DNA of 63,944 bases, counting the filler, from Choristocarpus tenellus KU-1152 (taxonomy: Eukaryota; Protista; Phaeophyceae): the NCBI GenBank assembly GCA_964200185.2. It is 10 parts of 10 records of this genome, joined end to end, with 100 filler letters (N's around TTAATTAATTAA, not from the genome) between each part and the next. Parts side by side here need not be neighbours in the genome. Positions count along the whole stretch, not along the records: positions 10,970 to 23,012 come from CAXNAD020002012.1; 9 more parts are not named here. One strand, given 5' to 3'. Each line of letters starts with the position of its first letter. Position 1 is the first letter of the stretch. The position numbers and the translations under genes are program-made. The notes under the pieces were generated by a model, which made no database searches, was not told where the DNA came from, and saw nothing but the letters and a program-made list of their open reading frames with translations. This document shows positions 9,820 to 23,112 of this stretch, in pieces.

Positions 9820-11139
9820 TCGGTCAGTGTCGCCTTAGGGACTGACTAGGCATCAGTTTCGCGCTACACCTCTCACTCACTACTGCCTTAAACCATCACG
9901 GTAGCAATAGAAGCATGAACGAGCTCATATGTCCGTTCTAGGTATAGCGCGCTAAAAGGTAGCACACCCTAACCCTGGGGAACGCGGTCGTTTTCCACTA
10001 CTGTAACAGTAAAAGAGCCGGTGCTGCCATAGCAAAGGAAAAACAAACAAACAAAAAAAACACACACACACACACACAATGAAAAAAAAAATTATATGTC
10101 CTCCGCCATCAAAAACGGAACGTCAGACGTCGATTGATGTGGACAAACAAAACAGGGAGGACGACGCATGCTCTCTCTACTGAAGAACAAAATAAAAAAA
10201 GTCGACACTCATCGCCCTGAGTAGTAGTGGTAACCCATCCACTGTATATGCATGATCGGACACGTTCACACGAGCATCTATAACAAACCCCACTGCTGCT
10301 GGCCGCCGAGATGCTAATTTTATCAACTGGCAGTTACAACAATTCTATATGACGCAATCCCAGTGATAATGCCCAGGTAATGTCGATGACCAATTGTGTC
10401 AAGATCAGCACACGTTGCCGTAACTGCAACGACAGAGTCAGTCAGTCAATCGTAACTCTCAGAAAAAAAGAAAGAAGAAGGACCGACAACAACTGACGTC
10501 AAAAACAAACGCCTGCACAAATACTACTATCTCCGTAGTCACACCCACACCAACACCAGTCGCGATCATTGCCGACACACCTTCATATCACCAAGATACA
10601 AGATCAACAGACATATATATATTAAAAAAAAAAAAACAGGATACAAGATCAACACCCGCGACAGCCGAACATAACGCCATCTCACCCAATACCAATGTCA
10701 GGATCGACGACAACACCAATTCCAACAAATCAACACAACCAGCAAGCACGCCACCAACATCAATACCAACACCAGCAACAGCTACAGACTGCTACAGAGT
10801 GCTACAGAGTGCCGCACCTGCTTGCACTCAGGGCAGGCAAACACGCCGCTGGGGGGGGGGGGCACTTCCNNNNNNNNNNNNNNNNNNNNNNNNNNNNNNN
10901 NNNNNNNNNNNNNTTAATTAATTAANNNNNNNNNNNNNNNNNNNNNNNNNNNNNNNNNNNNNNNNNNNNAAAAAAACAAAAGAAGGAAGGTGGGATTGTG
11001 GGCCCCGCTTTTTTTTTTTTTTTGGGGGGGGGGAGTTGAGAACATAGGTCCAGAACACTTGGTGGATCAATTATCTACCCAGACTCTTTGGCGAATGATA
11101 CGTCCAACGATATATACACCGACCGCTCTTGGAATAAAC

Positions 11140-13565
11140 TCAAGGGTGCCCGTTGTGTATTAATGTGCCCCCAACCGACTAAGTACATTAGCAAATAATG
11201 AAACAGTGCTTAGACACATTAATTTCGACCATAAAGCTGTTGGACAGGACTGGACAGGACTGTGAGTGATGTACACAAGACCAAATGCACCAGAAATCAG
11301 AGGCAGCAAGCACATGTGCTTCAAGACATGCACATTGTGCAATAATATTCAAGACATGCGAACCAAGAACAATAATATTATCACACCTATTCAAGACATA
11401 CGCCAATCTTCCTACTACTCAATACACAAGATTGGGGAAGATTGGGGCAAATTGGAGGGGGGCGGGGGCGGGGGGGGCGGAATGCTTGACCTCTCAACAC
11501 ACTGCAAAATCCATCACCGCTAAATGTAGATTAACATATTAACATATTAATTCTATTCTAGAAGTTGCCATCACAACCCCCTAATCTCCCTCCTTCATTT
11601 TCCCAAGCACAACTGCCAAAGAACAGCCAAACACACAACCTCCCTCCAACTCTTGTATCTTTTCCTGCTAAAACTGTAACTGTGGGTAAGTATTTCTTAC
11701 ATTCTAACAAAACACTGCTGCAACCTCCCCCAATGAGTATGATGTGGAGGTATGACCAGCAAACACGCACATACAGAAAACAAAAAAAAGGTGAGCCTCA
11801 ACCATTTTCTGAATGGAATGCTCAGTGAAGGTACTACATCCCAATAGTACATCGCAATAAAAGAGCCCATAAATCCACATTCGTTTGCTTCCCCAAGGGA
11901 CTTAGTACCACAAAACAAAGGAGTTTCTCCATGTTTTCAACAACAGATGGTGGTGGCAGAGGGTACCCACCCTACCCTCTCCCCACCAGTGGGCATCAAG
12001 GCACAAAAACTACCCCGACAGTCCACACACAACAGAAGAACAGCAACCCCCCAACAAATGCACTGTGTGGCAAACAAATAACACTTGACCTTTCCATTAC
12101 CCTCACCTTTTTCCTCTTCCTAGGCCCTCTCTTACACACGCCACCAGAAGGAGAAGCAGAAGTTATACCAACACCACCACCTGCCACACCTGCAGCAGCT
12201 GGGGCAGACCCCAACAGTGGCATGCTGTTGCCTGTTGCCACGGTAGGGGAATTTTCTGCCAGGAACACCATACTTGAGCCTATTTCGATCTCCCCTATTT
12301 CCTCACCTTCTCGAATATCAGCTGTTGTAAGACCCCCAGCACCAGACAGAGCAACCCCCTCCCCCTCTGGTCCTGTTCCTTCACCTAACCTTACTGCTTC
12401 CACTGCAAGCTCCCCTCCCCGCCCTTCCCCCTCTGCCCCTGCCCCAAGTCCTACCCCGGTCCCACCTATTGCAGTTGTTGATATATACTTGTCTGGCGTA
12501 GCTGTAGACGGGGTTTCCCCTTGATTTTGTTGTTGTGAGTTGAACGTGAAGTTGATCTTTCTAAGGTAGTGGAATCTACCCTCCACCTTCGAACATGGGC
12601 AGTTGTCAGTCATCAGCAGACAACCAACATTGGGGAGAGAGAGAGGTGACTAGGGGGAGGCGCTGTATGCATGAGTGTGCACTTTTGGTTGGGAGAGAGA
12701 GAGATGACTATTAACAGTGGCAAGTCTCAGACCCAAGGTTTGAGTCTCCTCAGAAAGATTGTGTGTCTCTCAGCTTGCACCATGTGCAAACAGCAATCAC
12801 TCCTCAGTTGAGTTTCGGACCATTTCAGGTTAGGGTTAGGGTTAGGATTAGTGTATAGTATAGTGTAAGATGGGTGAACGGAATCAGCACACGTCTCCAA
12901 AAGGCCGCACCTTGCACCTGATTACGGCAGTGTGAAGTGAATGCATTCCATCTCTCTGAAACCCTAACATCTATCCATACCCCCCAAAAAAACACTATCA
13001 TGCAAAAATGGCAGCACCAAATCAACTCAACATTTGCTCAAGGTTAAAACTAGTAGAGGTCCATTCATAGAGAGTACCTTGTGCACCGGAAATATCTGTT
13101 ACATAATAGTTGCAACGCCAGCAAGACACTTGCATTAAAAATCCTACCACGACAGTCAGCGCAGCTATGTATGTATGTATGTATGTATGTATGTATATAC
13201 CCCATGTGTAATTTGCAACTGACCTGGTGAGGCAAGCAAACGGATACTGACAATCAAAAAACAAATGGTTTCTACTGTGACTGCATGGAAATAACATTTT
13301 TTTCTGTCTTTCGAATGTGTGCACATGTGCAAGTCAGCTCACCTGTGATGGGCGCAGGCCCAGACTCTTTGCAAACCCCTCTAGTTGCTTGGAACGACCA
13401 CGCAGCGTTCCCCCCCACTCGTGAAACTTCTCCTCACAGGCCTCTATCTGCTTCTGGGAAAGCCTATGAGAGGAATAGAACACCCAACACCCAATAACCA
13501 ACACCGTATTGAAGGAGATGAAAAAAAAACATATATTTTGTAGTTGTATATATATATATATATAT

Positions 13566-13600
<35 letters not shown>

Positions 13601-16600
13601 GATGATGAGCGTAGTGGTAGGTCATACCACTGAATAGCATTGTTTGGCTGGTACAGTGGATGGATCAACACATAGAAAAATGCTCTGTGAATGGATACTG
13701 GTGTGATGCACCTGAGTTTAGACAGTGTGGCTGTGCTCACTGATTGGGTAACAAACCAGAGAAGGGCAAGGAAGGGCAAGTACAAGTGAGTTGACAACAC
13801 AATAGCTAAACTGTGATAATAAAAGGAGGTCCTGAGATAGGGCTGTGCCACTGTGTTGTACATAATGCCTGCTGTACAAAATAGGAAATAGGTGAGAACA
13901 AGGGGTGCATGAACTCATGCCGAGAAAGAGGAAGCTTGCATAGGCAACTCAAACACATCCAACTACTTGTCTTCAAGCATTGCATTCCCCTCGAATCCTT
14001 CTACTCAGAGTATCGCCAACGATACACTATGGACAATCCTTTCTAATCCTGTTCTTGCCGATGCCTGACGCCCCAAAAGCTCTGATTTACCCACCGTTGA
14101 TGTGATCGTTTCTCAGACAAAAGTCGGCCATCCTTTGCAGCGACCTCCCCAGCCTTGCGCTCCCTACCCATCCGGGAGATGTAGTGGAAGCGTTTTTCGA
14201 CCTTGGCCACTGAGAGCCCCATTGATGTTGCAAACGATATTAGCTCTGCTTTCTGACCCTACGTTCCCCCCCCCCCCCCCCCCCCCCCCCCGTGTCCAGG
14301 TCAAGAGGAATCCATTGTGGGGGAGAAAAGGAGTTGAGAGGAATTGGGGCTGTGCTCATGAGACATCTGCATGCCTAGGTTTGGACGATACATCCCTGTT
14401 TGTTCTTAACAGCACCTGGTCAACAATCGTCTTTCAAACAAGTTTTTTCCGGAAGGCAATAAGCTAGTCTACAGTGATTTTTCAGTTGAGTGAGGTGGTA
14501 TGAGGGCAGAGGAGTGTGAGTGCACACTAAGGCCAATGACTATGTTGTACAGGGCAGCCTTAGATCACACGAAGGGGCAAAAAGTGAGATGAAGAGGTGG
14601 TTTGGGGGTACCACTATATCTAACCTACTGTGCTGTATACATAGGATAGGAAGATGGGGATGTGCAACAGGGTTAGGGGTTGGGGTGAAGAGGGGCAATA
14701 TCTGAATGGCAAAAAAGAGTTGAACGAAAAATCTGCCGAGAAGGATAGAAATGAAAGGTCTACTGAGAAAGGGTGTTGCAGCCTCATTCCCATATGGAGA
14801 CTGAGGAGGATGGATCAGAGGGCACCAACAGGTAAAGGCACAGAGATGGTCAGCAACAGGGTAAGCAATTCCCCTCCAAGGCACTACTGTAGAGTTCCTT
14901 TTGGCTTCTGTGACTAAAGAGAGACAACACGTTAGCCACAACTTGGAGTAACAAAGAAGGCACCAATGTGCATTGTGTTTAGTAGTAACACTTGTCCCCT
15001 CCACCTATATCCCCAAGACGACTGGATACTACTGTAACCCTCAACTGCCCCCAAAAACACTGACCAACCTTGAGGGTTCCACCCCACTCATTGAACTTGT
15101 CTTCGATGGCCTCAGCCTGCCTCCTGCTCATCCACCTTCGTCCCTGATCCCCTGCCATCCGCCTTTCGCTATTGTTACACCCCACGCCTGGAGAGGATGA
15201 TTTCAGTGGTGATGGCAAAGGGGCCGACCCTGGTGACTGCTCTGAGTCAACATGTCCTTGCTGCCCCTTCCTTTGTACATGGAGATGGTTACTTGTAGAC
15301 TTGGAGTGTTGTTTGAGCTCCAGTCCTACATACCCCTGCTGAATGCCTCTATAACTGTCTCCACCTCCTATTTGGCTTGCAGCCCCTGCCCCTACTTGGT
15401 GGACTTGGCCGCAATTGAGGCTGTCCCCCTGCATCAAGATAAAATAACCACACAAGGGTCGGCAAAGAAAATGGGAATGAGTAGGGGTTGAAAAATACGT
15501 GCAACTGATGCTGGGGCATGGTAACTGAAGAGGTAACTCCAGTTAACACACAACAATGGCAAGTTTGCAAGCAGCAGGTGCAGGAATGGAGAGTTCATCC
15601 CTTAGCTGCAATATTCACAAACAGGCAAGGACTTGGGTTGTTCGCTTGTGCACAGCTGTGAAATATGTACAGCACCTCTGCAATAGCAGAACACCTCTGG
15701 AGTATGTTCGTGCTGCCTATGTATTAACTCACTAAGCAAGTATACCACTTTGAAGTGGAAGGGAAGAAATAGGATATTTGGAGGTGGAACAGAAGGCAGT
15801 GAACGGATCTCTACTCTTTCCTGAATCTCACTCTTCTGGAACCACTTTCTGTGGCAAGAAACTTGTGAATTCACAATTTGGTACGGGAATGATATATCTA
15901 CAATTGTGAACATTCCATCCTGTCCATTTTCTGACTCTCACGGTCAAGAAATACATTCATGGTTTAGCTGTTCTTTTCAGTGGACAAGAAGATGTTTCTG
16001 CATGAGTAATCCATTTGTTCAGATCAGCTTTCTATTCGGCATTCAAATCTTGTTCCAAATGGAGACCACCTCAACTTTAAATTTCCAATGGGAAAATTTG
16101 GAGACTGAACTCCTACAAGCACATGAGGGAAAGATAGAGGGAGGCGCCCTTCCTTGCACCGGGCATTGCGTTGGGTGGAGCCTTGCAGTCTCAAACCACG
16201 GCTATGACTGGGGGTATCAATGGTTTAGGAGTAAAATATCGATTCAACCTAAACGAGGCCTGCACTTTGATGGAAAGACACATGGGATGGGATAGTTTAA
16301 GGAAGAACGGCATTTCGAGTTCCTTGGAACTCCTTCTCCCGCACTACATCAACAGGAGGGTACCTGAATCCCTGTCCTCTGTCCCTGTCTGACCCACCAC
16401 TGACAGTAAGCTAGGAAGTAGGACGAAGGAGAGAAAAATACACTCACAACACCATTGGTGACCGGCAATACACCAAAGGTAGAACAACATATAAAGGTAG
16501 CGAGGAGTAAATGACGGATAAGGTAGAGTGGTCGCAGGCTAGTGAGAGTGTGTGTGTGTGACAACTTTGTCCCTTCTCGTACGACGGAACCTTATCGAGC

Positions 16601-17164
16601 TCAAACAAAAACTACAATCCGACCGATCCGACTTGGTTCATAAAAAACATTGTCTCAGCCTTGTTCACTAGAAATATAACAGTATGAACTGAAGGGAGGG
16701 AAAGGAGAAATCATGCCATGATAGTTGATGGAGGACCTATGCAAGGTAGCTCTCTCCACCTCTACGTGTCAACAATTCTTGAGCCATGTACGAACGGTCA
16801 TGAGAAAGAGTTCGCGAAAGAGGGAATGCAAGAGAGCATTAAAGAGGCCCCCTTCAAGTCGACTCACCTCCTGCAATGCATCGTCCTTTTCCTTCTTTAG
16901 GTGCTCTGATACTTCTTCGTCGTGATGTTCAAGGGATCCAATGACAATCCCTTCAACCATTCCAACATGCACCCTGATGCCCGCACCGTCGCTAGCTGAG
17001 GATACCTCGGCCGTTCCATCATCTGCAGAGGAGCCCTCGTGTTCAGCTCTGACGTTGTCCAAGGGACCCATGGTAGATTCATGATTGGATTGGGCATCCA
17101 TTCCAAGGGAGAGGTCGTCGTGCACCTCGTGCAGGTGTATCGAATCCATGCTGTCGTCGTCCAT
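11140..17164 (-). CDS. Putative transcription factor with two tandem divergent homeodomain-like repeats
   Basis: Well-supported exons 15428-15069, 14258-14095, 13463-13343 and 12586-12107 (GT-AG, phases 0,2,0). They give RRWMSRRQAEAIEDKFNEWGGTLKGQKAELISFATSMGLSVAKVEKRFHYISRM and RLSQKQIEACEEKFHEWGGTLRGRSKQLEGFAKSLGLRPSQVEGRFHYLRKI, then a Gly/Ala/Glu-rich region and an NLS-like KRGPRKRKK. Probable first exon 17164-16868 (acidic, MDDDSM...) and probable last exon 11178-11140. Exons between 16868 and 15428 are uncertain. Confidence 0.75.
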
Positions 17165-17945
17165 GCACCTCCCAAGGCCAGTCCACAAGGCTATCAAAGG
17201 GAAAATACCCAAGGTGTAACCTGTGGGGATCCCTCGAGGCAGGTGCCTCACGCAATTATATCCATATACAGTAATATCGGTAATTTAAGGGTAGAGTAGT
17301 GTGGGTGACAGGTTGAGGACCTGTTTTTTCTACAAGACTTCGGAGGCAGTCTGTCTAGATTCCTTCTCACTTCTCTAATTTGAGTTTAGTTATATATGGT
17401 TATTGTCGGGTAGGTGGAGGGAGGAATTGAGTTGCAGCTCGCATCTTTGTGGTATCTGTGCTGGAAGAGAGAGCCAAATTTCACTGGGTAAGATTTCTAG
17501 TATGAAATGTGAGACATTTCCCCATGAGCTCTTGCAGGCACTACGATATCGTAGTGTTTGTCCTCCGTTTGGTACCCACACATCAATAAAACCCTTGATC
17601 TTCGACTCCTCCTTGGCATCCCATCTGTCGCATCTATCTTATAGATTGGTATGGGCAGTGTTGGATGGTAGTCTGCTTCCTCGTATTTGAAAAGGCCTCT
17701 TCCGTGTTTTGATCTCACTGTGTCCTAGCTAATAGAGCAATCTTGATCCCCATACTCAAAGCCTTCCCTACAAGACCTCGTATAATTGTTTCGGGATCGT
17801 GAAGTCGCGGTAGGTGGTCTCACATCTCATTCTGAATCACTTTAAGTTTTATACCGTAGTGTACGCACTTTAGCAATGAGCTTAGTCCAACCTTCGCCTT
17901 CTTGCGACACCCCCGTTTAGGAGGAGAATTTCGTCGAAGTTCGAC

Positions 17946-20900
17946 ATGATGGAGGAAGTGTTCAGCGAGATATGGCCAGCCGCATTGGTGGTGGTGGTAA
18001 TGGTGGTCATACACCGGGGCATCACCCTTAACTTCGGCTCGGGGGCTGGCAAGTTCACCTTGGTTGCCGCCGCTGGCGTGGCTGGCTACTCTCTCTTCAA
18101 CAGCGGGAACATGGAGAAGGTACTAGGTTCATATAGATGCCTAGGGCTGTGCAAAGCAAGGCTTGTGTTTCACCATTACTGGGTTTGGTTCCCGCACTTG
18201 ATGAGACATCAGGTGTTCTGCCGCATTTGCTGCATTTTGTAGGACATCGAAGGGGATAGCCTAGTCCATCTCATCATCTCACACAACCCCGCAGGTAGAC
18301 TCCAAACGCAAGTGTAAAGTAGGATCTGATTCTTGATGGTAAGGTTAAATGGTAGATTAAAAAACCTGTGCAGCTCTAGCTCATGACGCCTCTTCGATTA
18401 AGGCAGCAAGTTGGGGTGTTCCTATCAACAGAGGTGGTACATCTAAACTCTTCTATTCCATGCTTAAGCCTGTGGACCTGTGTCATGACGCTGTGCAGTT
18501 CTTTCTGACATCCCCGCTCACCTCATATATCCCAATGACATGGTGGGCTTAATGTGGATACTCACACTTGTAGGCATGGGAGCACTTTACAGCATACGAT
18601 GAGGGCACCAAGCACATGTTTGCCATTGTTGGTGTGACCTTTGGATACGTCCTCGCCATGTTCTCTCCCAACTCGGCTAAGGTGTGAATCAAGTTGTGAC
18701 TATGAATTTGGTTAGATCTAGACATACGGGCAACTAGTGCACTTCAGGGGTTTTATTTGAGGAAGAGTTTACATTACCTTTCTAAACATGGAGTGGTGGC
18801 AACTCTCCAGCCAAAACACAAAGCCATCTGTTGTTAGCATCTATAAAATCACAAGGTCTCATCCCTTCACTGTTATGCTGCCCTTCCTTCCACTCCTAAC
18901 AGTCCGCTGTGCCCCTAGCGAGCACAGGACAGGATGGCAAAACCTCAAGCCTCCCTGTGATGTACCCCAGGGAGCTTCCTACTGACAAGAAAGAATCGTT
19001 CCTCAAGATTCATGACTTCCTTGTCGAGCAACTGCTGGATGACCTTGCAAAGAATGTAGGTACCCTCTCATTGCCTCTGCATTATTTCGTTCCTACTGCC
19101 TGTTGTCCACTTGCCTCTTCTGTGGAGAGCACCCTGGACCCACCTCACTAGCCCATAAGACGTGCATCCATCTTGTCCCATCCATGTGTTTTACTCTTCT
19201 TTACTTGCCTAACTGTTTAGACCTATTGCTAGCTATGGATCTCGAACCTCACCTTTGATCAGTGAGTACCTACATGCCTTAGGTCAAAAGACCGGAAGGA
19301 ATAATGCCAAGATCCTGTTCTTTGTCCTCGAACTATCGCCATTTACTCAAGTCCAAACCCTAACCCCTGACAATAGCTTGCGTTCTAAATCTCCCTCAAC
19401 AGTTCTTAGATCTTGTATCTTAGCTCTTGTCAACAGTTGCGTCATGATGATGTTGCCCGTTCCTCCACACATGAGCAAACCATGATACGTACACATTTAT
19501 TGGTCTGTGTTGTCCCCAGTACGAGGCCATTCCAGAGCAGATCAGCTGGATGTCTGAGATGATGATATATAACACCCGGGGTGGAAAGATGAATCGTGGG
19601 ATGGGGGTGGTCGATGTTCTGCGTGCTTTTGCTACTGCGGATGGGCGAGAGCTCACTCATGAGGAGGTGAATGCAAGATGGAAGCGAGAAGTGGTTTTGG
19701 TGTTGGGCTGAAATGCTGGGGAGATGAGGCACTTGTGATAGAAATGTATGGAAGTTGATATTATGCAGAGTGGTGATGAGGAAAGAAATGAAGGGTAGGT
19801 TGTGCCTCCGAGCCGCTTGTGCTGGTTACCTGAGTTTGTTCGTTTGTATATGTGTTTCGGGGATGCTGCTGCCACATTTTGTTGAAGGATTTCCTTTCCC
19901 CACCATAGACATGAGAATGGCAACATTTTCGAACTTGGTAGTGTACCTTCATCCAACCATATAGGCCCAGTCAATTATTTCGCATGGAGGTACGTTCCTT
20001 GATCTATGTAGAACTTAACATCCGTATCTGATACAAAGCCGAAACTCTGGTCCTTCAACTTCAACCTTCTTCCCCCCCACCATACTTTAGTGACTGTTTT
20101 TGTGTTGGTCTATCATTTGTTTACCTTGTTTTGGAGGTGATCTACCCACTTCCATCTTGGATGTGGACCAACAGTACCTAGTTTTGTTTCTTTTCTTTAG
20201 CCAGATATTTTTGTTGTTCTGAAATGGTATACCTCTGATTGTCAATTGCTTGTTGGTGAACTTCTCTCTAATAGGTCTCTGACGGGATATTGTGCTTTGG
20301 GGCTCCACAATGTAGTATGAATGTGAATTAGTACTCCTGTAGAATCATCTTTTTCTGGTGTAGTGGAAATGTTGGTTGACCACAATGAGGAGACAACCCT
20401 AGGTTATCTGCACAACTTAATTGTGTATGCAGTACAAGCTGTGGACAGAGCATGGCACTGAATTTTACCCATATCAATATGGTATCCCTAGGTCACATTA
20501 TTTAACTCACTAGGAGCAAGACACCAAGTTCAGATTGAAGTTTCCTATCTTTTTCTTCCTTGTCCCTATAACCTCCAAACAGATGCTTCTGTTTGAGGAT
20601 AAGATGGTGGTATTATCCACAAGAGTAGAGAGTGAAAGATTCAGTTTATGATACATATATGATACCTCTACACTCTCCCACCTCATACATGATACCTCGC
20701 TGCTGCCCAGGTGTGCCGTGGAAGTGTACTTGGATGGTGTGTGGAGTGGCTGCAGGCGTTCTTCCTCGTTGCTGATGATGTTATGGACAAGAGCCTCACC
20801 CGAAGGGGGCAGCCTTGCTGGTACAAGGTTCAAGCTACTACCCACAAGTAGTGCATACTCGGACAATCTCTCTTTCTGACCCCTCAACTTCCTGTCCTCT

Positions 20901-22363
20901 AGAGCCTTTTGTCGTTCCCCAGCAGTTATGTTTGAATCTGTCCTCTGCCTTTTGACTGCTTTTATTGTTTCTATGGTGTGACCCTAACCCTACACCTGGC
21001 CATTGCATTGTTTGATGCTCTAGTTGTTGGGAAATGCGTAAGTGGATGACGGAGGTCCGTCTGTATCAATGGATGAGTGATTGGAACACATCAAGGCATC
21101 TGGTTGTGCACTTAGTGTGCATTGTGCAATGTGCACAAGGGCAGTCTGTTTGGTGAATGAGCAATCACATGTGGGACCAAGCTTGAGACATTAGAGGAAA
21201 GAGAGGAGGCAATACCACAAGACCCTGAGTCAAAGTATCTTAGAGGGTAGAGCCGCATCCGTTGGGCCAAAATCCAATGTTGCAATTTTGATAAAATTTT
21301 GGCTATCATGTTTGTTGGGAAGGTGCCAATATCCTTGTTCCGAACACACCTTTTCATAACATACATATTTTGCTTACTTTGAGACATTTCGGAGTAGGAA
21401 AATGTCACAAAAAAACCCCGTGGGAAGCCAAGCCCCAAATGGAAAAGCAGGGCAAAATTCGTACCCATTAAGATACTTTCATTCCCTTTGAACTACCTTG
21501 TCCAACACCAAAGTTCATTCCACAGAAATATACTCCTAGGCCACACAGGCAACGCAAGTCTCTTCATTGCGCTGATCAGAGAATTTTTATTTATTGTCCA
21601 CAACCCGTTTTCATATTGAATTCTACCACTGGTACCTTGTTGTGACCCTTGATGTGATAAGTCAGAGGGCTGCCTATAGTGGACATGTCATTGAGGACTT
21701 TGTTTGCATTATTTCCATCTCACTACTGTTGGACAGATTCCCAGGGTGCAGGAGATAGCCGTCAATGATTCCTTCATCCTTGAGTCGCATGTGTTCAAGG
21801 TGAGCTCGCAGGTGGACAGAGGGGGGGGAAACAGATTATGTCCTGTGTGAGATCCATTTTCAGCAAAGCACAGAAAGTACTGACCCAGATTGTAGAGAAG
21901 TAGGGGCACTGCAGCTCCTAGTTCAAGTCACTTCAATGTGCAATGTGGTGAAATGTATTGCTAGTTAAGTCTGCGTATCTATTCCTTGTCCAAGCACTAT
22001 AGACTGCATGGCAGTGGAACATCATGTGCAGTCTATCTGCATGCGAAATTTGAACATTCTTGACCATTAATGCAATCTGCCACAAGGCACAGGCGAATCT
22101 TGGCAGCAGGGGATGCCAAGATTCGTGGAAGATTCAAACCACCCAAGTCTCTTCTTTTGTGTTTCAGAGACCACTCCTCTCGTACCCTGTGTTTTGTCTT
22201 TTGTTTTGATATCTAATTGGCAGCTTCTTAAGATTCACTTTGGGTCTGAGCCGTACTACCTGCAGTTACTCGAGCTCTTCCTTGAGGTGGACTACAAGAC
22301 CGAGATGGGACAGCTCTTGGACCTCACCTCCCAGCCCATGGACAAGCCCTCTGACCTCACAAG
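17946..22363 (+). CDS. FDPS: Farnesyl diphosphate synthase (3'-partial) with an N-terminal hydrophobic extension
   Basis: Exons 17946-18119, 18574-18681, 18903-19055, 19520-19666, 20711-20827, 21737-21799 and 22224-22363 are all in phase. Motifs: [44 protein letters not shown] (FARM with FF at -5/-4, the C15 type), IAVND and [11 protein letters not shown]. The remaining exons lie beyond the contig end. Confidence 0.95.
21227..21484 (+). mobile_element. MITE family A (~257 bp) in FPPS intron 5, TSD CCT
   Basis: TIRs GAGTCAAAGTATCTTAGAGGGTA ... TACCCATTAAGATACTTTCATTC, flanked by CCT on both sides. Confidence 0.9.
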
Positions 22364-23112
22364 GCAAGTCTCTTCTTCTGAACACATCTGTTGTTCGTCC
22401 TTCCTCTGACATGCACACATACACAACCTAGTTTTTGCATGGTTTGTGGTTTGTTCTACTTGTGACGGGGGCAAGAATGGTGGAAGCATGCACTGTTGTT
22501 GTGCCAGCCTGCTCCATTTTCCCACCTGCCTCCATCGCACTGAGGAGCCCTGTCTGTTGTAGACTCTGTTGTAGAGATGGTGGTTTGGGACTGGTCCAGA
22601 TTGCAGTCAATGTGGGCTCAAGGTTGTTTGACAGTGGTGTATCACTCTAAGTATTTTTTTGCAGGTTCCAAGGTGGTGGAGAGTGATACAAGTTTGATTC
22701 AAAAACAAGTGAAGGTGCTTGATTGTGAGGAAGGAGGGGGCTGGTTGTTGTACAAGGCAAGTTATTCTGTGCAATCCATGGTATTTTCTGCAGTGGTATC
22801 CTCAGATATTTCCATGTTGTGGAAAAGTACGGTATGCCCTTCTTAGATGGGGTCAGTGTCCAAGGTGTAAAATGGCGTGTGCACTTGAATCGGCACTCGC
22901 TTTTATCTTTTTTATTTGATGTGCTTTTTATTTCATGGCAAAGGGTGTTTTTTTGCTGACATTTCAAATCCGACACGTGCGACCAAATCACACCAAAAAA
23001 GTGAAAATCGAANNNNNNNNNNNNNNNNNNNNNNNNNNNNNNNNNNNNNNNNNNNNTTAATTAATTAANNNNNNNNNNNNNNNNNNNNNNNNNNNNNNNN
23101 NNNNNNNNNNNN

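What the first reader, a model, noticed from the sequence alone, without database searches (positions are those of the whole stretch)
12107..15428. Protein with two tandem TALE-length but non-canonical homeodomains (WFxN replaced by RFHY)
Seen: splicing four exons hidden from the ORF track gives two similar ~60-aa repeats with the homeodomain framework (Q..A.E.KF in helix 1; FA..LGL...V in helices 2/3). In both repeats the helix-1 Phe to helix-2 hydrophobic residue spacing is 17 rather than 14, i.e. a three-residue loop extension. Known: that extension defines TALE homeodomains, and the TALE factors ORO and SAM control the sporophyte programme in Ectocarpus. Unusual: the PYP loop is replaced by WGGTL, and the near-invariant W48/N51 by R/Y in both repeats, so DNA recognition must differ or be lost. 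Inference: an undescribed double-homeodomain class with an acidic N-terminus and a basic NLS.
Basis: partly seen in the sequence, partly recalled or inferred. Interest (0 to 1): 0.8.

Follow-up and report, generated by a model that had tools for sequence, protein, structure and literature searches.

The report
Double divergent homeodomain gene, brown alga
A spliced gene of the early-branching brown alga Choristocarpus tenellus encodes two tandem domains with a homeodomain fold and a TALE-length loop, in which the two most conserved homeodomain residues (Trp48, Asn51) are replaced by Arg and Tyr. This marks a small homeodomain family that is in neither Pfam nor the one published stramenopile TALE list I could check.

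Summary
On the minus strand, five GT-AG exons (17164-16868, 15428-15069, 14258-14095, 13463-13343, 12586-12107) encode a protein with two ~63-aa repeats. The repeats are 51% identical without gaps (BLASTP E 5e-20).

- **Fold.** An AlphaFold2 model of the repeat (pLDDT 84) is a three-helix bundle. Its 31 best matches among 48,161 PDB representatives are all homeodomains (Z 10.2-7.0). Myb/SANT domains reach only Z 5.8 or less.
- **Loop.** Loop 1 carries three extra residues, the TALE length.
- **Sequence.** No Pfam family is reached. Homeodomain is the best match but falls below threshold (14 bits against 22.9).
- **Family.** W48 and N51 are replaced by R and Y in every relative found. The family motif is R-F-[H/D/E]-Y-[L/I]-R-K. 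The family is tiny and otherwise known only from environmental eukaryotic contigs. Most relatives have one such domain plus an uncharacterised C-terminal domain.

The most likely function is a nuclear nucleic-acid-binding regulator with non-canonical recognition, but binding was not tested. TALE membership is not established.

The parts
16868..17164 (-). Exon 0, with the start codon at 17164-17162. It encodes 99 aa and is strongly acidic (26 D/E against 5 K/R).
   Evidence: Translation equals P0001 residues 1-99. Composition. GTGAGT donor at 16867. No Pfam family.
15069..15428 (-). Exon 1 (120 aa). Its last 28 codons (15152-15069) encode the N-terminal arm, helix 1 and the start of loop 1 of homeodomain 1.
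   Evidence: Equals P0001 100-219. AG acceptor and GT donor present. tblastn of relatives P0002 and P0007 ends exactly at 15069.
14095..14258 (-). Exon 2 (164 nt). 14258-14154 encodes the rest of homeodomain 1 (helices 2 and 3, ...VEKRFHYIS...). 14114-14095 encodes the start of homeodomain 2. The exon ends with two bases of a split Arg codon.
   Evidence: Equals P0001 220-273 plus part of codon 274. P0007 residues 52-76 align from 14252.
13343..13463 (-). Exon 3 (121 nt). It encodes helix 1, the extended loop (EWGGTLRG) and helix 2 of homeodomain 2.
   Evidence: Equals P0001 275-314. tblastn with P0002 gives E 1e-9 and 57% identity. Sub-threshold Pfam Homeodomain match over P0001 269-316.
12107..12586 (-). 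Exon 4 (160 codons). 12586-12539 encodes helix 3 of homeodomain 2 (VEGRFHYLRK). A Gly/Ala/Glu-rich low-complexity region follows. 12133-12107 encodes the basic KRGPRKRKK stretch, a candidate nuclear localisation signal. A GT donor follows at 12106, so the gene continues towards the contig end.
   Evidence: Only the first 50 codons are in P0001. P0002 170-183 aligns at 12589-12548. No further homologous exon was found in 10970-12100.
14266..14291 (-). A G26 homopolymer on the gene strand inside intron 1. It ends 5 nt before the AG acceptor of exon 2.

Best explanation
This is a real, spliced, protein-coding gene of Choristocarpus tenellus, cut off by the end of its 12-kb contig. The product has four parts:
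- a strongly acidic N-terminus;
- a Ser/Gly/Gln-rich linker;
- two tandem 63-residue homeodomain-fold domains, 13 residues apart;
- a low-complexity region ending in a basic NLS-like stretch.

Each domain keeps most of the homeodomain framework: the basic N-terminal arm, Q12, F20, A35, L38, L40, Q44, V45, F49 and, in HD2, R53. Loop 1 is three residues longer (E-W-G-G-[S/T]-L-[R/K]-G). The canonical W48-F49-x50-N51 is replaced by R-F-[H/D/E]-Y, which is conserved throughout a small family of eukaryotic proteins.

Shown: the exon structure, the repeat, the homeodomain fold, the loop length, conservation of the substitutions, and the lack of membership in any curated family.

Inferred: the protein is nuclear and binds nucleic acid. 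Helix 3 would sit in the major groove and the basic arm in the minor groove. Base recognition would differ from the N51-adenine contact of ordinary homeodomains. The two domains would read a bipartite site in the way other double-homeodomain proteins do, with the acidic N-terminus acting as an activation region.
For: - **Gene model.** Exon translations map exactly onto public protein CAM9339846.1, and all introns are GT-AG. That annotation came from Gmove, an evidence-only combiner of transcript and protein alignments. No protein relative exists in Ectocarpus or UniRef-type data. The model was therefore most likely built from assembled transcripts.
- **Junctions.** 15069/14258 and 13343/12586 are colinear with uninterrupted relatives P0002, P0007 and P0012.
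- **Repeat.** E 5e-20.
- **Fold.** pLDDT 84 with helices at 10-22, 31-41 and 45-67. The Foldseek top 50 are all homeodomains, probability 0.85-1.0. VIA-align gives Z 9-10 at rmsd 1-2 A over 55-65 residues. In the exhaustive search, ranks 1-31 are homeodomains and Myb reaches Z 5.8 at most. ESM Atlas neighbours all carry PF00046.
- **Sequence trace.** Homeodomain is the best Pfam family for 3 of 18 copies, at E 0.02-0.04. There is also a full-length alignment to Engrailed in the same register.
- **Conservation.** R-F-H-Y is invariant in 7 complete copies. R-F-D-Y and R-F-E-Y occur in three further lineages.
- **Charge.** Net +6 per domain.
- **Regulator-like context.** Relatives sit in open frames of 700 to more than 1000 codons with polyglutamine tracts.
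Against: - No binding data exist.
- N51 is the residue that ordinary homeodomains use for base contact, and here it is lost. Position 50 is acidic in some lineages, which is unusual for a DNA-facing residue.
- Net charge of +6 is modest for a homeodomain.
- The sequence link to homeodomains is sub-threshold, so the fold could in principle be convergent. Z of about 10 for a small helical bundle is not decisive on its own (tool note).
- The structural evidence is a prediction from an 18-row alignment.
- RNA reads were not examined.
- The C-terminal part of the gene is missing from the contig.
Confidence: 0.6

Rival explanations
1. The domains have a homeodomain fold but have lost DNA binding. 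They would act as protein-protein interaction modules, as the homeodomain-only protein HOP/HOPX does. The conserved R-F-x-Y-[L/I]-R-K surface would then be a partner-binding face.
For: N51 is lost, W48 is lost, and position 50 is acidic in some lineages. HOP is among the structural matches (Z 8.2). Net charge is only +6.
Against: The basic N-terminal arm (R at column 5 in 9 of 12 copies), R53 and K54 are conserved. These are the phosphate and minor-groove contact positions of DNA-binding homeodomains. Strict conservation of the helix-3 face across distant lineages fits either reading.
Confidence: 0.22
2. The family is a DNA-targeting module of a nuclease-like or mobile-element-derived protein. 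The homeodomain-like domain would direct a C-terminal restriction-endonuclease-like domain, which may be inactive. The Choristocarpus gene would be the front half of such a protein.
For: Relatives P0002, P0007, P0012, P0020 and P0021 share a roughly 250-aa C-terminal domain with no Pfam family. The best fold matches of its model are repeatedly restriction endonucleases, Mus81/EME and XisH-like proteins.
Against: That model is of low confidence (pLDDT 58). The matches are weak (Z 6.9 or less, TM about 0.25), which is within the tool's stated background. No conserved D...(D/E)xK motif is evident in alignment A5. No such exon lies in the window. Copies are single on their contigs, with no repeats or multi-copy signal.
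Confidence: 0.1
3. This is an annotation artefact. The exons would be chance open frames, or the contig would belong to a contaminating eukaryote rather than Choristocarpus.
For: The contig is only 12 kb. No other brown-algal homologue was found, although many Phaeoexplorer proteomes are in the searched databases. RNA reads were not examined.
Against: The internal repeat has E 5e-20. Relatives match each exon, up to E 1e-9. All junctions are GT-AG and in frame. The long introns fit a brown alga, unlike the intron-poor environmental relatives. Contamination cannot be excluded, but it would not change what the protein is.
Confidence: 0.05

Closest known systems
TALE-superclass homeodomains (PBX/MEIS/KNOX/BELL, yeast MATalpha2, brown-algal ORO and SAM)
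   Same: [quoted passage not shown] MATalpha2 aligns 60 residues on 60 without a loop gap. An Atlas cluster carrying Homeobox_KN superposes at rmsd 0.9 A over 65 of 68 residues. TALE factors are the only homeodomain class described in brown algae.
   Different: The loop has no P-Y-P; it reads E-W-G-G-[S/T]-L. WFxN is replaced by RF[H/D/E]Y. No Homeobox_KN, KNOX, PBC, MEIS or ORO/SAM-type domain was found. The family is absent from the published stramenopile TALE sequence list. Typical homeodomains score higher structurally than TALE ones (Z 10.2 against 8.1-7.0). Loop insertions have arisen repeatedly in evolution (PMC4901127), so length alone does not prove membership.
Double-homeodomain proteins (human DUX4; multi-homeodomain stramenopile proteins noted in PMC6368402)
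   Same: Both have two tandem homeodomain-fold domains on one chain separated by a short linker. DUX4 HD1 is the top exhaustive structural match (Z 10.2, rmsd 1.8 A, 64 residues). The eLife paper notes stramenopile proteins with more than one homeodomain.
   Different: DUX and the listed stramenopile proteins have canonical WFxN helices. There is no sequence relationship beyond the fold (17% identity). In this family the double arrangement is the exception (P0001 and P0002/P0019 only). The two repeat types also occur in opposite order in P0001 and P0002.
HOP/HOPX homeodomain-only protein and other degenerate homeodomains (ZHX, HOMEZ)
   Same: Both have a homeodomain fold with DNA-contact residues changed. 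Structural matches reach Z 8.2-7.2.
   Different: Those are lineage-specific animal proteins. In this family the substitutions are a conserved signature across distant lineages rather than relaxed positions.
Myb/SANT three-helix domains
   Same: Both are three-helix bundles of similar size. One of the 18 copies gives a weak Myb_DNA-bind_4 hit (E 0.11).
   Different: The structural match is much poorer (Z 5.5-5.8, rmsd 3-3.6 A, against Z 9-10 and rmsd 1-2 A for homeodomains). The regularly spaced Trp triad is absent.

Membership tests
Homeodomain (homeobox superfamily, Pfam PF00046) | Three-helix helix-turn-helix bundle with an N-terminal arm and a long recognition helix 3 | tested here: met
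   The AF2 model has pLDDT 84 and helices at 10-22, 31-41 and 45-67. Ranks 1-31 of 48,161 PDB representatives are homeodomains, Z 10.2-7.0. The Foldseek top 50 are all homeodomains. Atlas neighbours are all PF00046. This rests on a predicted structure, not a solved one.
Homeodomain (homeobox superfamily, Pfam PF00046) | Sequence match to the family profile above the curated threshold | tested here: not met
   The best score is 14.2-14.4 bits against a cut-off of 22.9 (E 0.02-0.04), and only for 3 of 18 copies. A profile search against PDB sequences reaches Engrailed at E 0.38 only.
Homeodomain (homeobox superfamily, Pfam PF00046) | Hallmark residues W48, F49, N51 and R53 in helix 3 (established knowledge of the family) | tested here: not met
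   F49 is kept. R53 is kept in 6 of 7 complete copies. W48 is R and N51 is Y in every copy (with register). Framework positions Q12, F20, A35, L38, L40, Q44 and V45 are retained.
Homeodomain (homeobox superfamily, Pfam PF00046) | Sequence-specific DNA binding | not testable with these tools
   Only indirect evidence is available: a basic arm and net +6 charge.
TALE superclass | [quoted passage not shown] | tested here: met
   48 residues align on 45 Pfam profile positions. Model residues 4-63 align on Antennapedia 4-60 and 1-63 on Pdx1 1-60, but 4-63 on MATalpha2 132-191. Loop 1 has 8 residues.
TALE superclass | TALE signature residues (P-Y-P in the loop, WFxN with a small residue at 50) and a match to Homeobox_KN (PF05920) | tested here: not met
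   The loop reads E-W-G-G-[S/T]-L and helix 3 reads R-F-[H/D/E]-Y. PF05920 gives no hit even at E 10.
TALE superclass | Phylogenetic grouping with TALE genes, or TALE partner domains (KNOX/MEIS/PBC, ORO/SAM domains) | tested here: inconclusive
   No such Pfam domain is present in P0001, P0002, P0007 or P0012. The motif is absent from the published stramenopile TALE sequences.

The most novel reading that the evidence does not exclude
The R-F-x-Y domains define an old, unrecognised homeodomain class of stramenopile-like algae. On this reading the class has abandoned the universal N51 base contact and reads nucleic acid, either DNA with a new code or RNA, through a Tyr/His/Arg face. It would normally be coupled to a C-terminal endonuclease-like domain. 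Among sequenced brown algae it would survive only in the early-branching Choristocarpus lineage, having been lost before the radiation in which ORO/SAM-type TALE factors govern the life cycle.
Probability: 0.3. Interest if true: 0.72.

Novelty: new variant of a known kind. Interest (0 to 1): 0.55.

Why it matters
Homeodomains are among the best-studied DNA-binding domains, and W48 and N51 are treated as nearly invariant. This family keeps the fold and framework but has replaced both residues, conserves the replacements across distant lineages, and escapes every curated profile. That makes it a natural experiment in how far homeodomain recognition can drift.

It also means transcription-factor censuses of brown algae and other stramenopiles are missing members. 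Those censuses currently count only three TALE genes per brown alga.

The gene was found in the early-branching Choristocarpus but in no other brown-algal proteome searched. If that absence is real, it gives a dated gain or loss event that can be tested. The practical importance is moderate until binding or a phenotype is shown.

Tried and rejected
- **Exon-by-exon Pfam scans** found nothing, because each repeat is split by an intron. The joined product was used only as the public protein P0001 returned by the profile search.
- **Sigma-70 region 4 or other bacterial HTH.** This was suggested by a weak language-model lookup on exon 2 (scores 0.78 or less). I rejected it because no such fold appears among the structural matches.
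- **Myb/SANT.** Rejected on Z 5.8 at most, against 10.2 for homeodomains.
- **G-patch.** Profile A6 hits the Spp2 G-patch peptide of PDB 6rm8 at E 0.0047 over 26 residues. I judged this a compositional or short-motif coincidence. The region is the loop plus helix 2 of a confidently folded bundle, and the hit does not extend further.
- **Other searches that gave nothing.** The Atlas feature search on P0007 returned nothing. The first metagenome scan with A4 failed for lack of a conserved block.
- **C-terminal domain exons.** A search of 10970-12100 found none.
- **Fold of the relatives' C-terminal domain.** The model has pLDDT 58 and only weak endonuclease-like matches. I kept this as a hint only.
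- **Profile-profile comparison (hhalign) with a curated homeodomain alignment** was not done. No reference homeodomain sequences were available by reference, and I did not type any.
Full report
**What the sequence is.** The piece 10970-23012 is a complete 12,043-bp contig. The profile search described below returned a 364-aa protein, P0001. A cluster look-up identifies it as NCBI CAM9339846.1, 'unnamed protein product, partial [Choristocarpus tenellus]', on a contig of exactly 12,043 bp. Choristocarpus is an early-branching brown alga sequenced in the Phaeoexplorer project.

**Check of the observation.** Instead I tested each exon translation as a substring of P0001. The mapping is:
- exon 0 (17164-16868): residues 1-99
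- exon 1 (15428-15069): residues 100-219
- exon 2 (14258-14095): residues 220-273, plus two bases of a split Arg codon for residue 274
- exon 3 (13463-13343): residues 275-314
- exon 4 (first 50 codons, from 12586): residues 315-364

All four introns begin with GT and end with AG, and measure 1439, 810, 631 and 756 nt. The public model stops inside exon 4. The open frame continues to 12107, where a GT donor follows, so the gene runs on towards the contig end. No further homologous exon lies in the remaining 1.1 kb.

The two repeats (P0001 192-254 and 268-330) align without gaps at 26 of 51 identities, E 5e-20. The repeat is real and far beyond chance.

**Support for the junctions.** There are two indirect lines of support.
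- Relatives encoded without introns (P0002, P0007, P0012) align colinearly across 15069/14258 and 13343/12586. For example, P0002 130-171 ends at 13340 and P0002 170-183 begins at 12589.
- The Phaeoexplorer gene models were built with Gmove, which uses only aligned transcripts and proteins and makes no ab initio prediction. No protein relative exists in Ectocarpus or other reference proteomes. The model was therefore most likely derived from assembled RNA-seq transcripts. This is an inference, not an observation.

**The family.** A 41-column profile made from separate, unjoined exon pieces (alignment A3) was searched against 1.84 billion representative proteins. It gave 18 hits at E of 0.001 or better, 16 of them true relatives.
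- P0002/P0019 has two copies of the domain. P0007, P0012, P0020 and P0021 have one copy followed by a conserved domain of about 250 aa that matches no Pfam family.
- Four further metagenomic loci carry P0007-type genes in open frames of 700 to more than 1000 codons, with long polyglutamine tracts.
- The ribulose-phosphate epimerase next to P0019 is closest to brown-algal, Chrysoparadoxa and oomycete proteins at about 60% identity. This suggests a stramenopile origin for that contig but does not prove it.
- The same result shows that many brown-algal proteomes (Ascophyllum, Pylaiella, Scytosiphon, Ectocarpus) are in the database. None of them yielded a homologue of this gene.

**Conservation of the unusual residues.** The motif R-F-H-Y is invariant in the seven complete copies first aligned. 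The invariant W and G of the loop (E-W-x-G) are present in all 18 copies.

Many short hits are unspliced gene calls. In four lineages with G+C from 47 to 65%, the exon ends ...G-L-T followed by GTGAG[T/C]. The next exon reads ...QVKKRFDYLRK (L008, L009) or ...RFRKRFEYLRK (L010). The family signature is therefore R-F-[H/D/E]-Y-[L/I]-R-K. R48, F49, Y51, R53 and K54 are fixed, while position 50 varies and is sometimes acidic. The substitutions are a maintained feature, not decay.

**Fold.**
- AlphaFold2 on the 18-row alignment A4 gives a confident model (mean pLDDT 84), with helices at 10-22, 31-41 and 45-67 and an 8-residue loop 1.
- Foldseek against the PDB returns only homeodomains in its top 50 (probability 0.85-1.0, TM 0.6-0.8). 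E-values are 0.2-0.7, and none of the matches reaches the tool's 0.001 cut-off.
- VIA-align gives Z 9-10 at rmsd 1-2 A over 55-65 residues.
- The exhaustive search of 48,161 representatives, independent of Foldseek, places homeodomains at ranks 1-31 (Z 10.2-7.0). The first unrelated chain is at Z 6.9, and Myb/SANT domains at Z 5.8-5.5.
- ESM Atlas neighbours all carry PF00046.

The tool warns that Z below about 13 can be a common arrangement for helical bundles. Here, though, the list is exclusively homeodomain, covers the whole domain, and agrees with the sequence trace. Homeodomain is the best Pfam family for three copies (E 0.02-0.04, 14 bits against a 22.9 cut-off). Profile A6 also aligns end to end with Engrailed (E 0.38).

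**Register and loop length.** Typical homeodomains align 57-60 residues on 60-63 model residues (Antennapedia 4-60 on model 4-63; Pdx1 1-60 on 1-63). The TALE protein MATalpha2 aligns 132-191 on model 4-63 with no length difference. The Pfam alignment places 48 residues on 45 profile positions.

With this register the family keeps R5 (in 9 of 12 copies), Q12, F20, A35, L38, L40, Q44, V45, F49 and R53.

**TALE membership.** The three-residue extension is met. The other TALE features are not:
- There is no P-Y-P in the loop and no WFxN.
- PF05920 gives no match.
- No KNOX, MEIS, PBC or ORO/SAM-type domains are present.
- TALE structures score lower than typical homeodomains.

Buerglin and Affolter stress that loop insertions have arisen repeatedly (PMC4901127). 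The published catalogue of stramenopile TALE homeodomain sequences contains WFIN and WFAN helices but no RFHY, EWGG or EWNG (PMC6368402 supplement 6). A full-text search for RFHY together with homeodomain found nothing. I therefore treat this as a TALE-length homeodomain-fold family of uncertain class, not described in anything I could search.

**Likely mechanism.**
- Both domains are moderately basic (net +6). They keep the basic N-terminal arm and the R53/K54 positions, which contact DNA in canonical homeodomains (established knowledge).
- The protein has an acidic N-terminus (26 D/E against 5 K/R in 99 residues) and a KRGPRKRKK stretch at the end of exon 4.
- Relatives have polyglutamine tracts.

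Together these fit a nuclear transcription-factor-like protein whose two domains read a bipartite site with non-canonical base recognition through Y51 and residue 50. This is inference.

The main rival is a non-DNA-binding interaction module like HOPX. It is favoured by the loss of N51 and by the acidic position 50 in some lineages.

A weaker rival links the domain to the relatives' C-terminal domain. Its low-confidence model (pLDDT 58) repeatedly but weakly resembles restriction-endonuclease-like folds.

**Verdict.** The caveats are that TALE membership, DNA binding and read-level splicing remain untested, and that the double arrangement is not the family's defining trait. It is a new variant of a known kind, of moderate interest.

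Noticed in passing
window 18900-22410, + strand: The neighbouring gene is a multi-exon polyprenyl/farnesyl-diphosphate synthase. The exon at 20711-20848 matches PF00348 at E 2.7e-16 (DDxxD region), and a second piece at 22113-22406 matches weakly. It is transcribed divergently from the homeodomain gene.
   Followed up: partly
window 14266-14291: An uninterrupted run of 26 G on the gene strand ends 5 nt upstream of the AG acceptor of exon 2, where a pyrimidine-rich tract would be expected. It may affect splicing or be an assembly-prone homopolymer.
   Followed up: no
window 12828-12851 (intron 3): Four copies of the telomere-type hexamer (GGTTAG on the + strand, CCCTAA-type on the gene strand) sit inside an intron. 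Microsatellites also occur: (TATG)8 at 13166-13196, and (TA)9 plus (AG)14 at 13547-13596.
   Followed up: no
window 12107-12437: The public model CAM9339846.1 ends at about 12437, inside exon 4. The frame stays open for another 110 codons, ending in KRGPRKRKK and a GT donor. The deposited protein therefore lacks the candidate nuclear localisation signal.
   Followed up: partly
L008 2083, L009 3178, L010 325, L011 884: Four environmental relatives share an intron at the same codon boundary (…G-L-T | GTGAG[T/C]), between helix 2 and helix 3. This is three codons upstream of the intron in Choristocarpus repeat 2. Repeat 1 instead has its intron in loop 1.
   Followed up: partly
P0001 against P0002/P0019: Choristocarpus repeat 2 is most like the first repeat of P0002 (34/54 identities). 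The second repeat of P0002 is most like the single domain of P0007 (34/54). The two repeat types therefore sit in opposite order in the two double-domain proteins.
   Followed up: partly
P0007 78-350, P0012, P0020, P0021, P0002 336-575 (alignment A5): Relatives share a conserved C-terminal domain of about 250 aa with no Pfam family. A low-confidence model (pLDDT 58) gives weak but recurrent matches to restriction-endonuclease-like folds: R.BspD6I, EcoT38I, Mus81/EME and XisH, at Z 6.9 or less.
   Followed up: partly
alignment A6, columns 23-48: The loop plus helix 2 segment (W-G-G-S-L-R-G…G-L) matches the Spp2 G-patch peptide of PDB 6rm8 at E 0.0047. I judged this a short-motif coincidence.
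   Followed up: no
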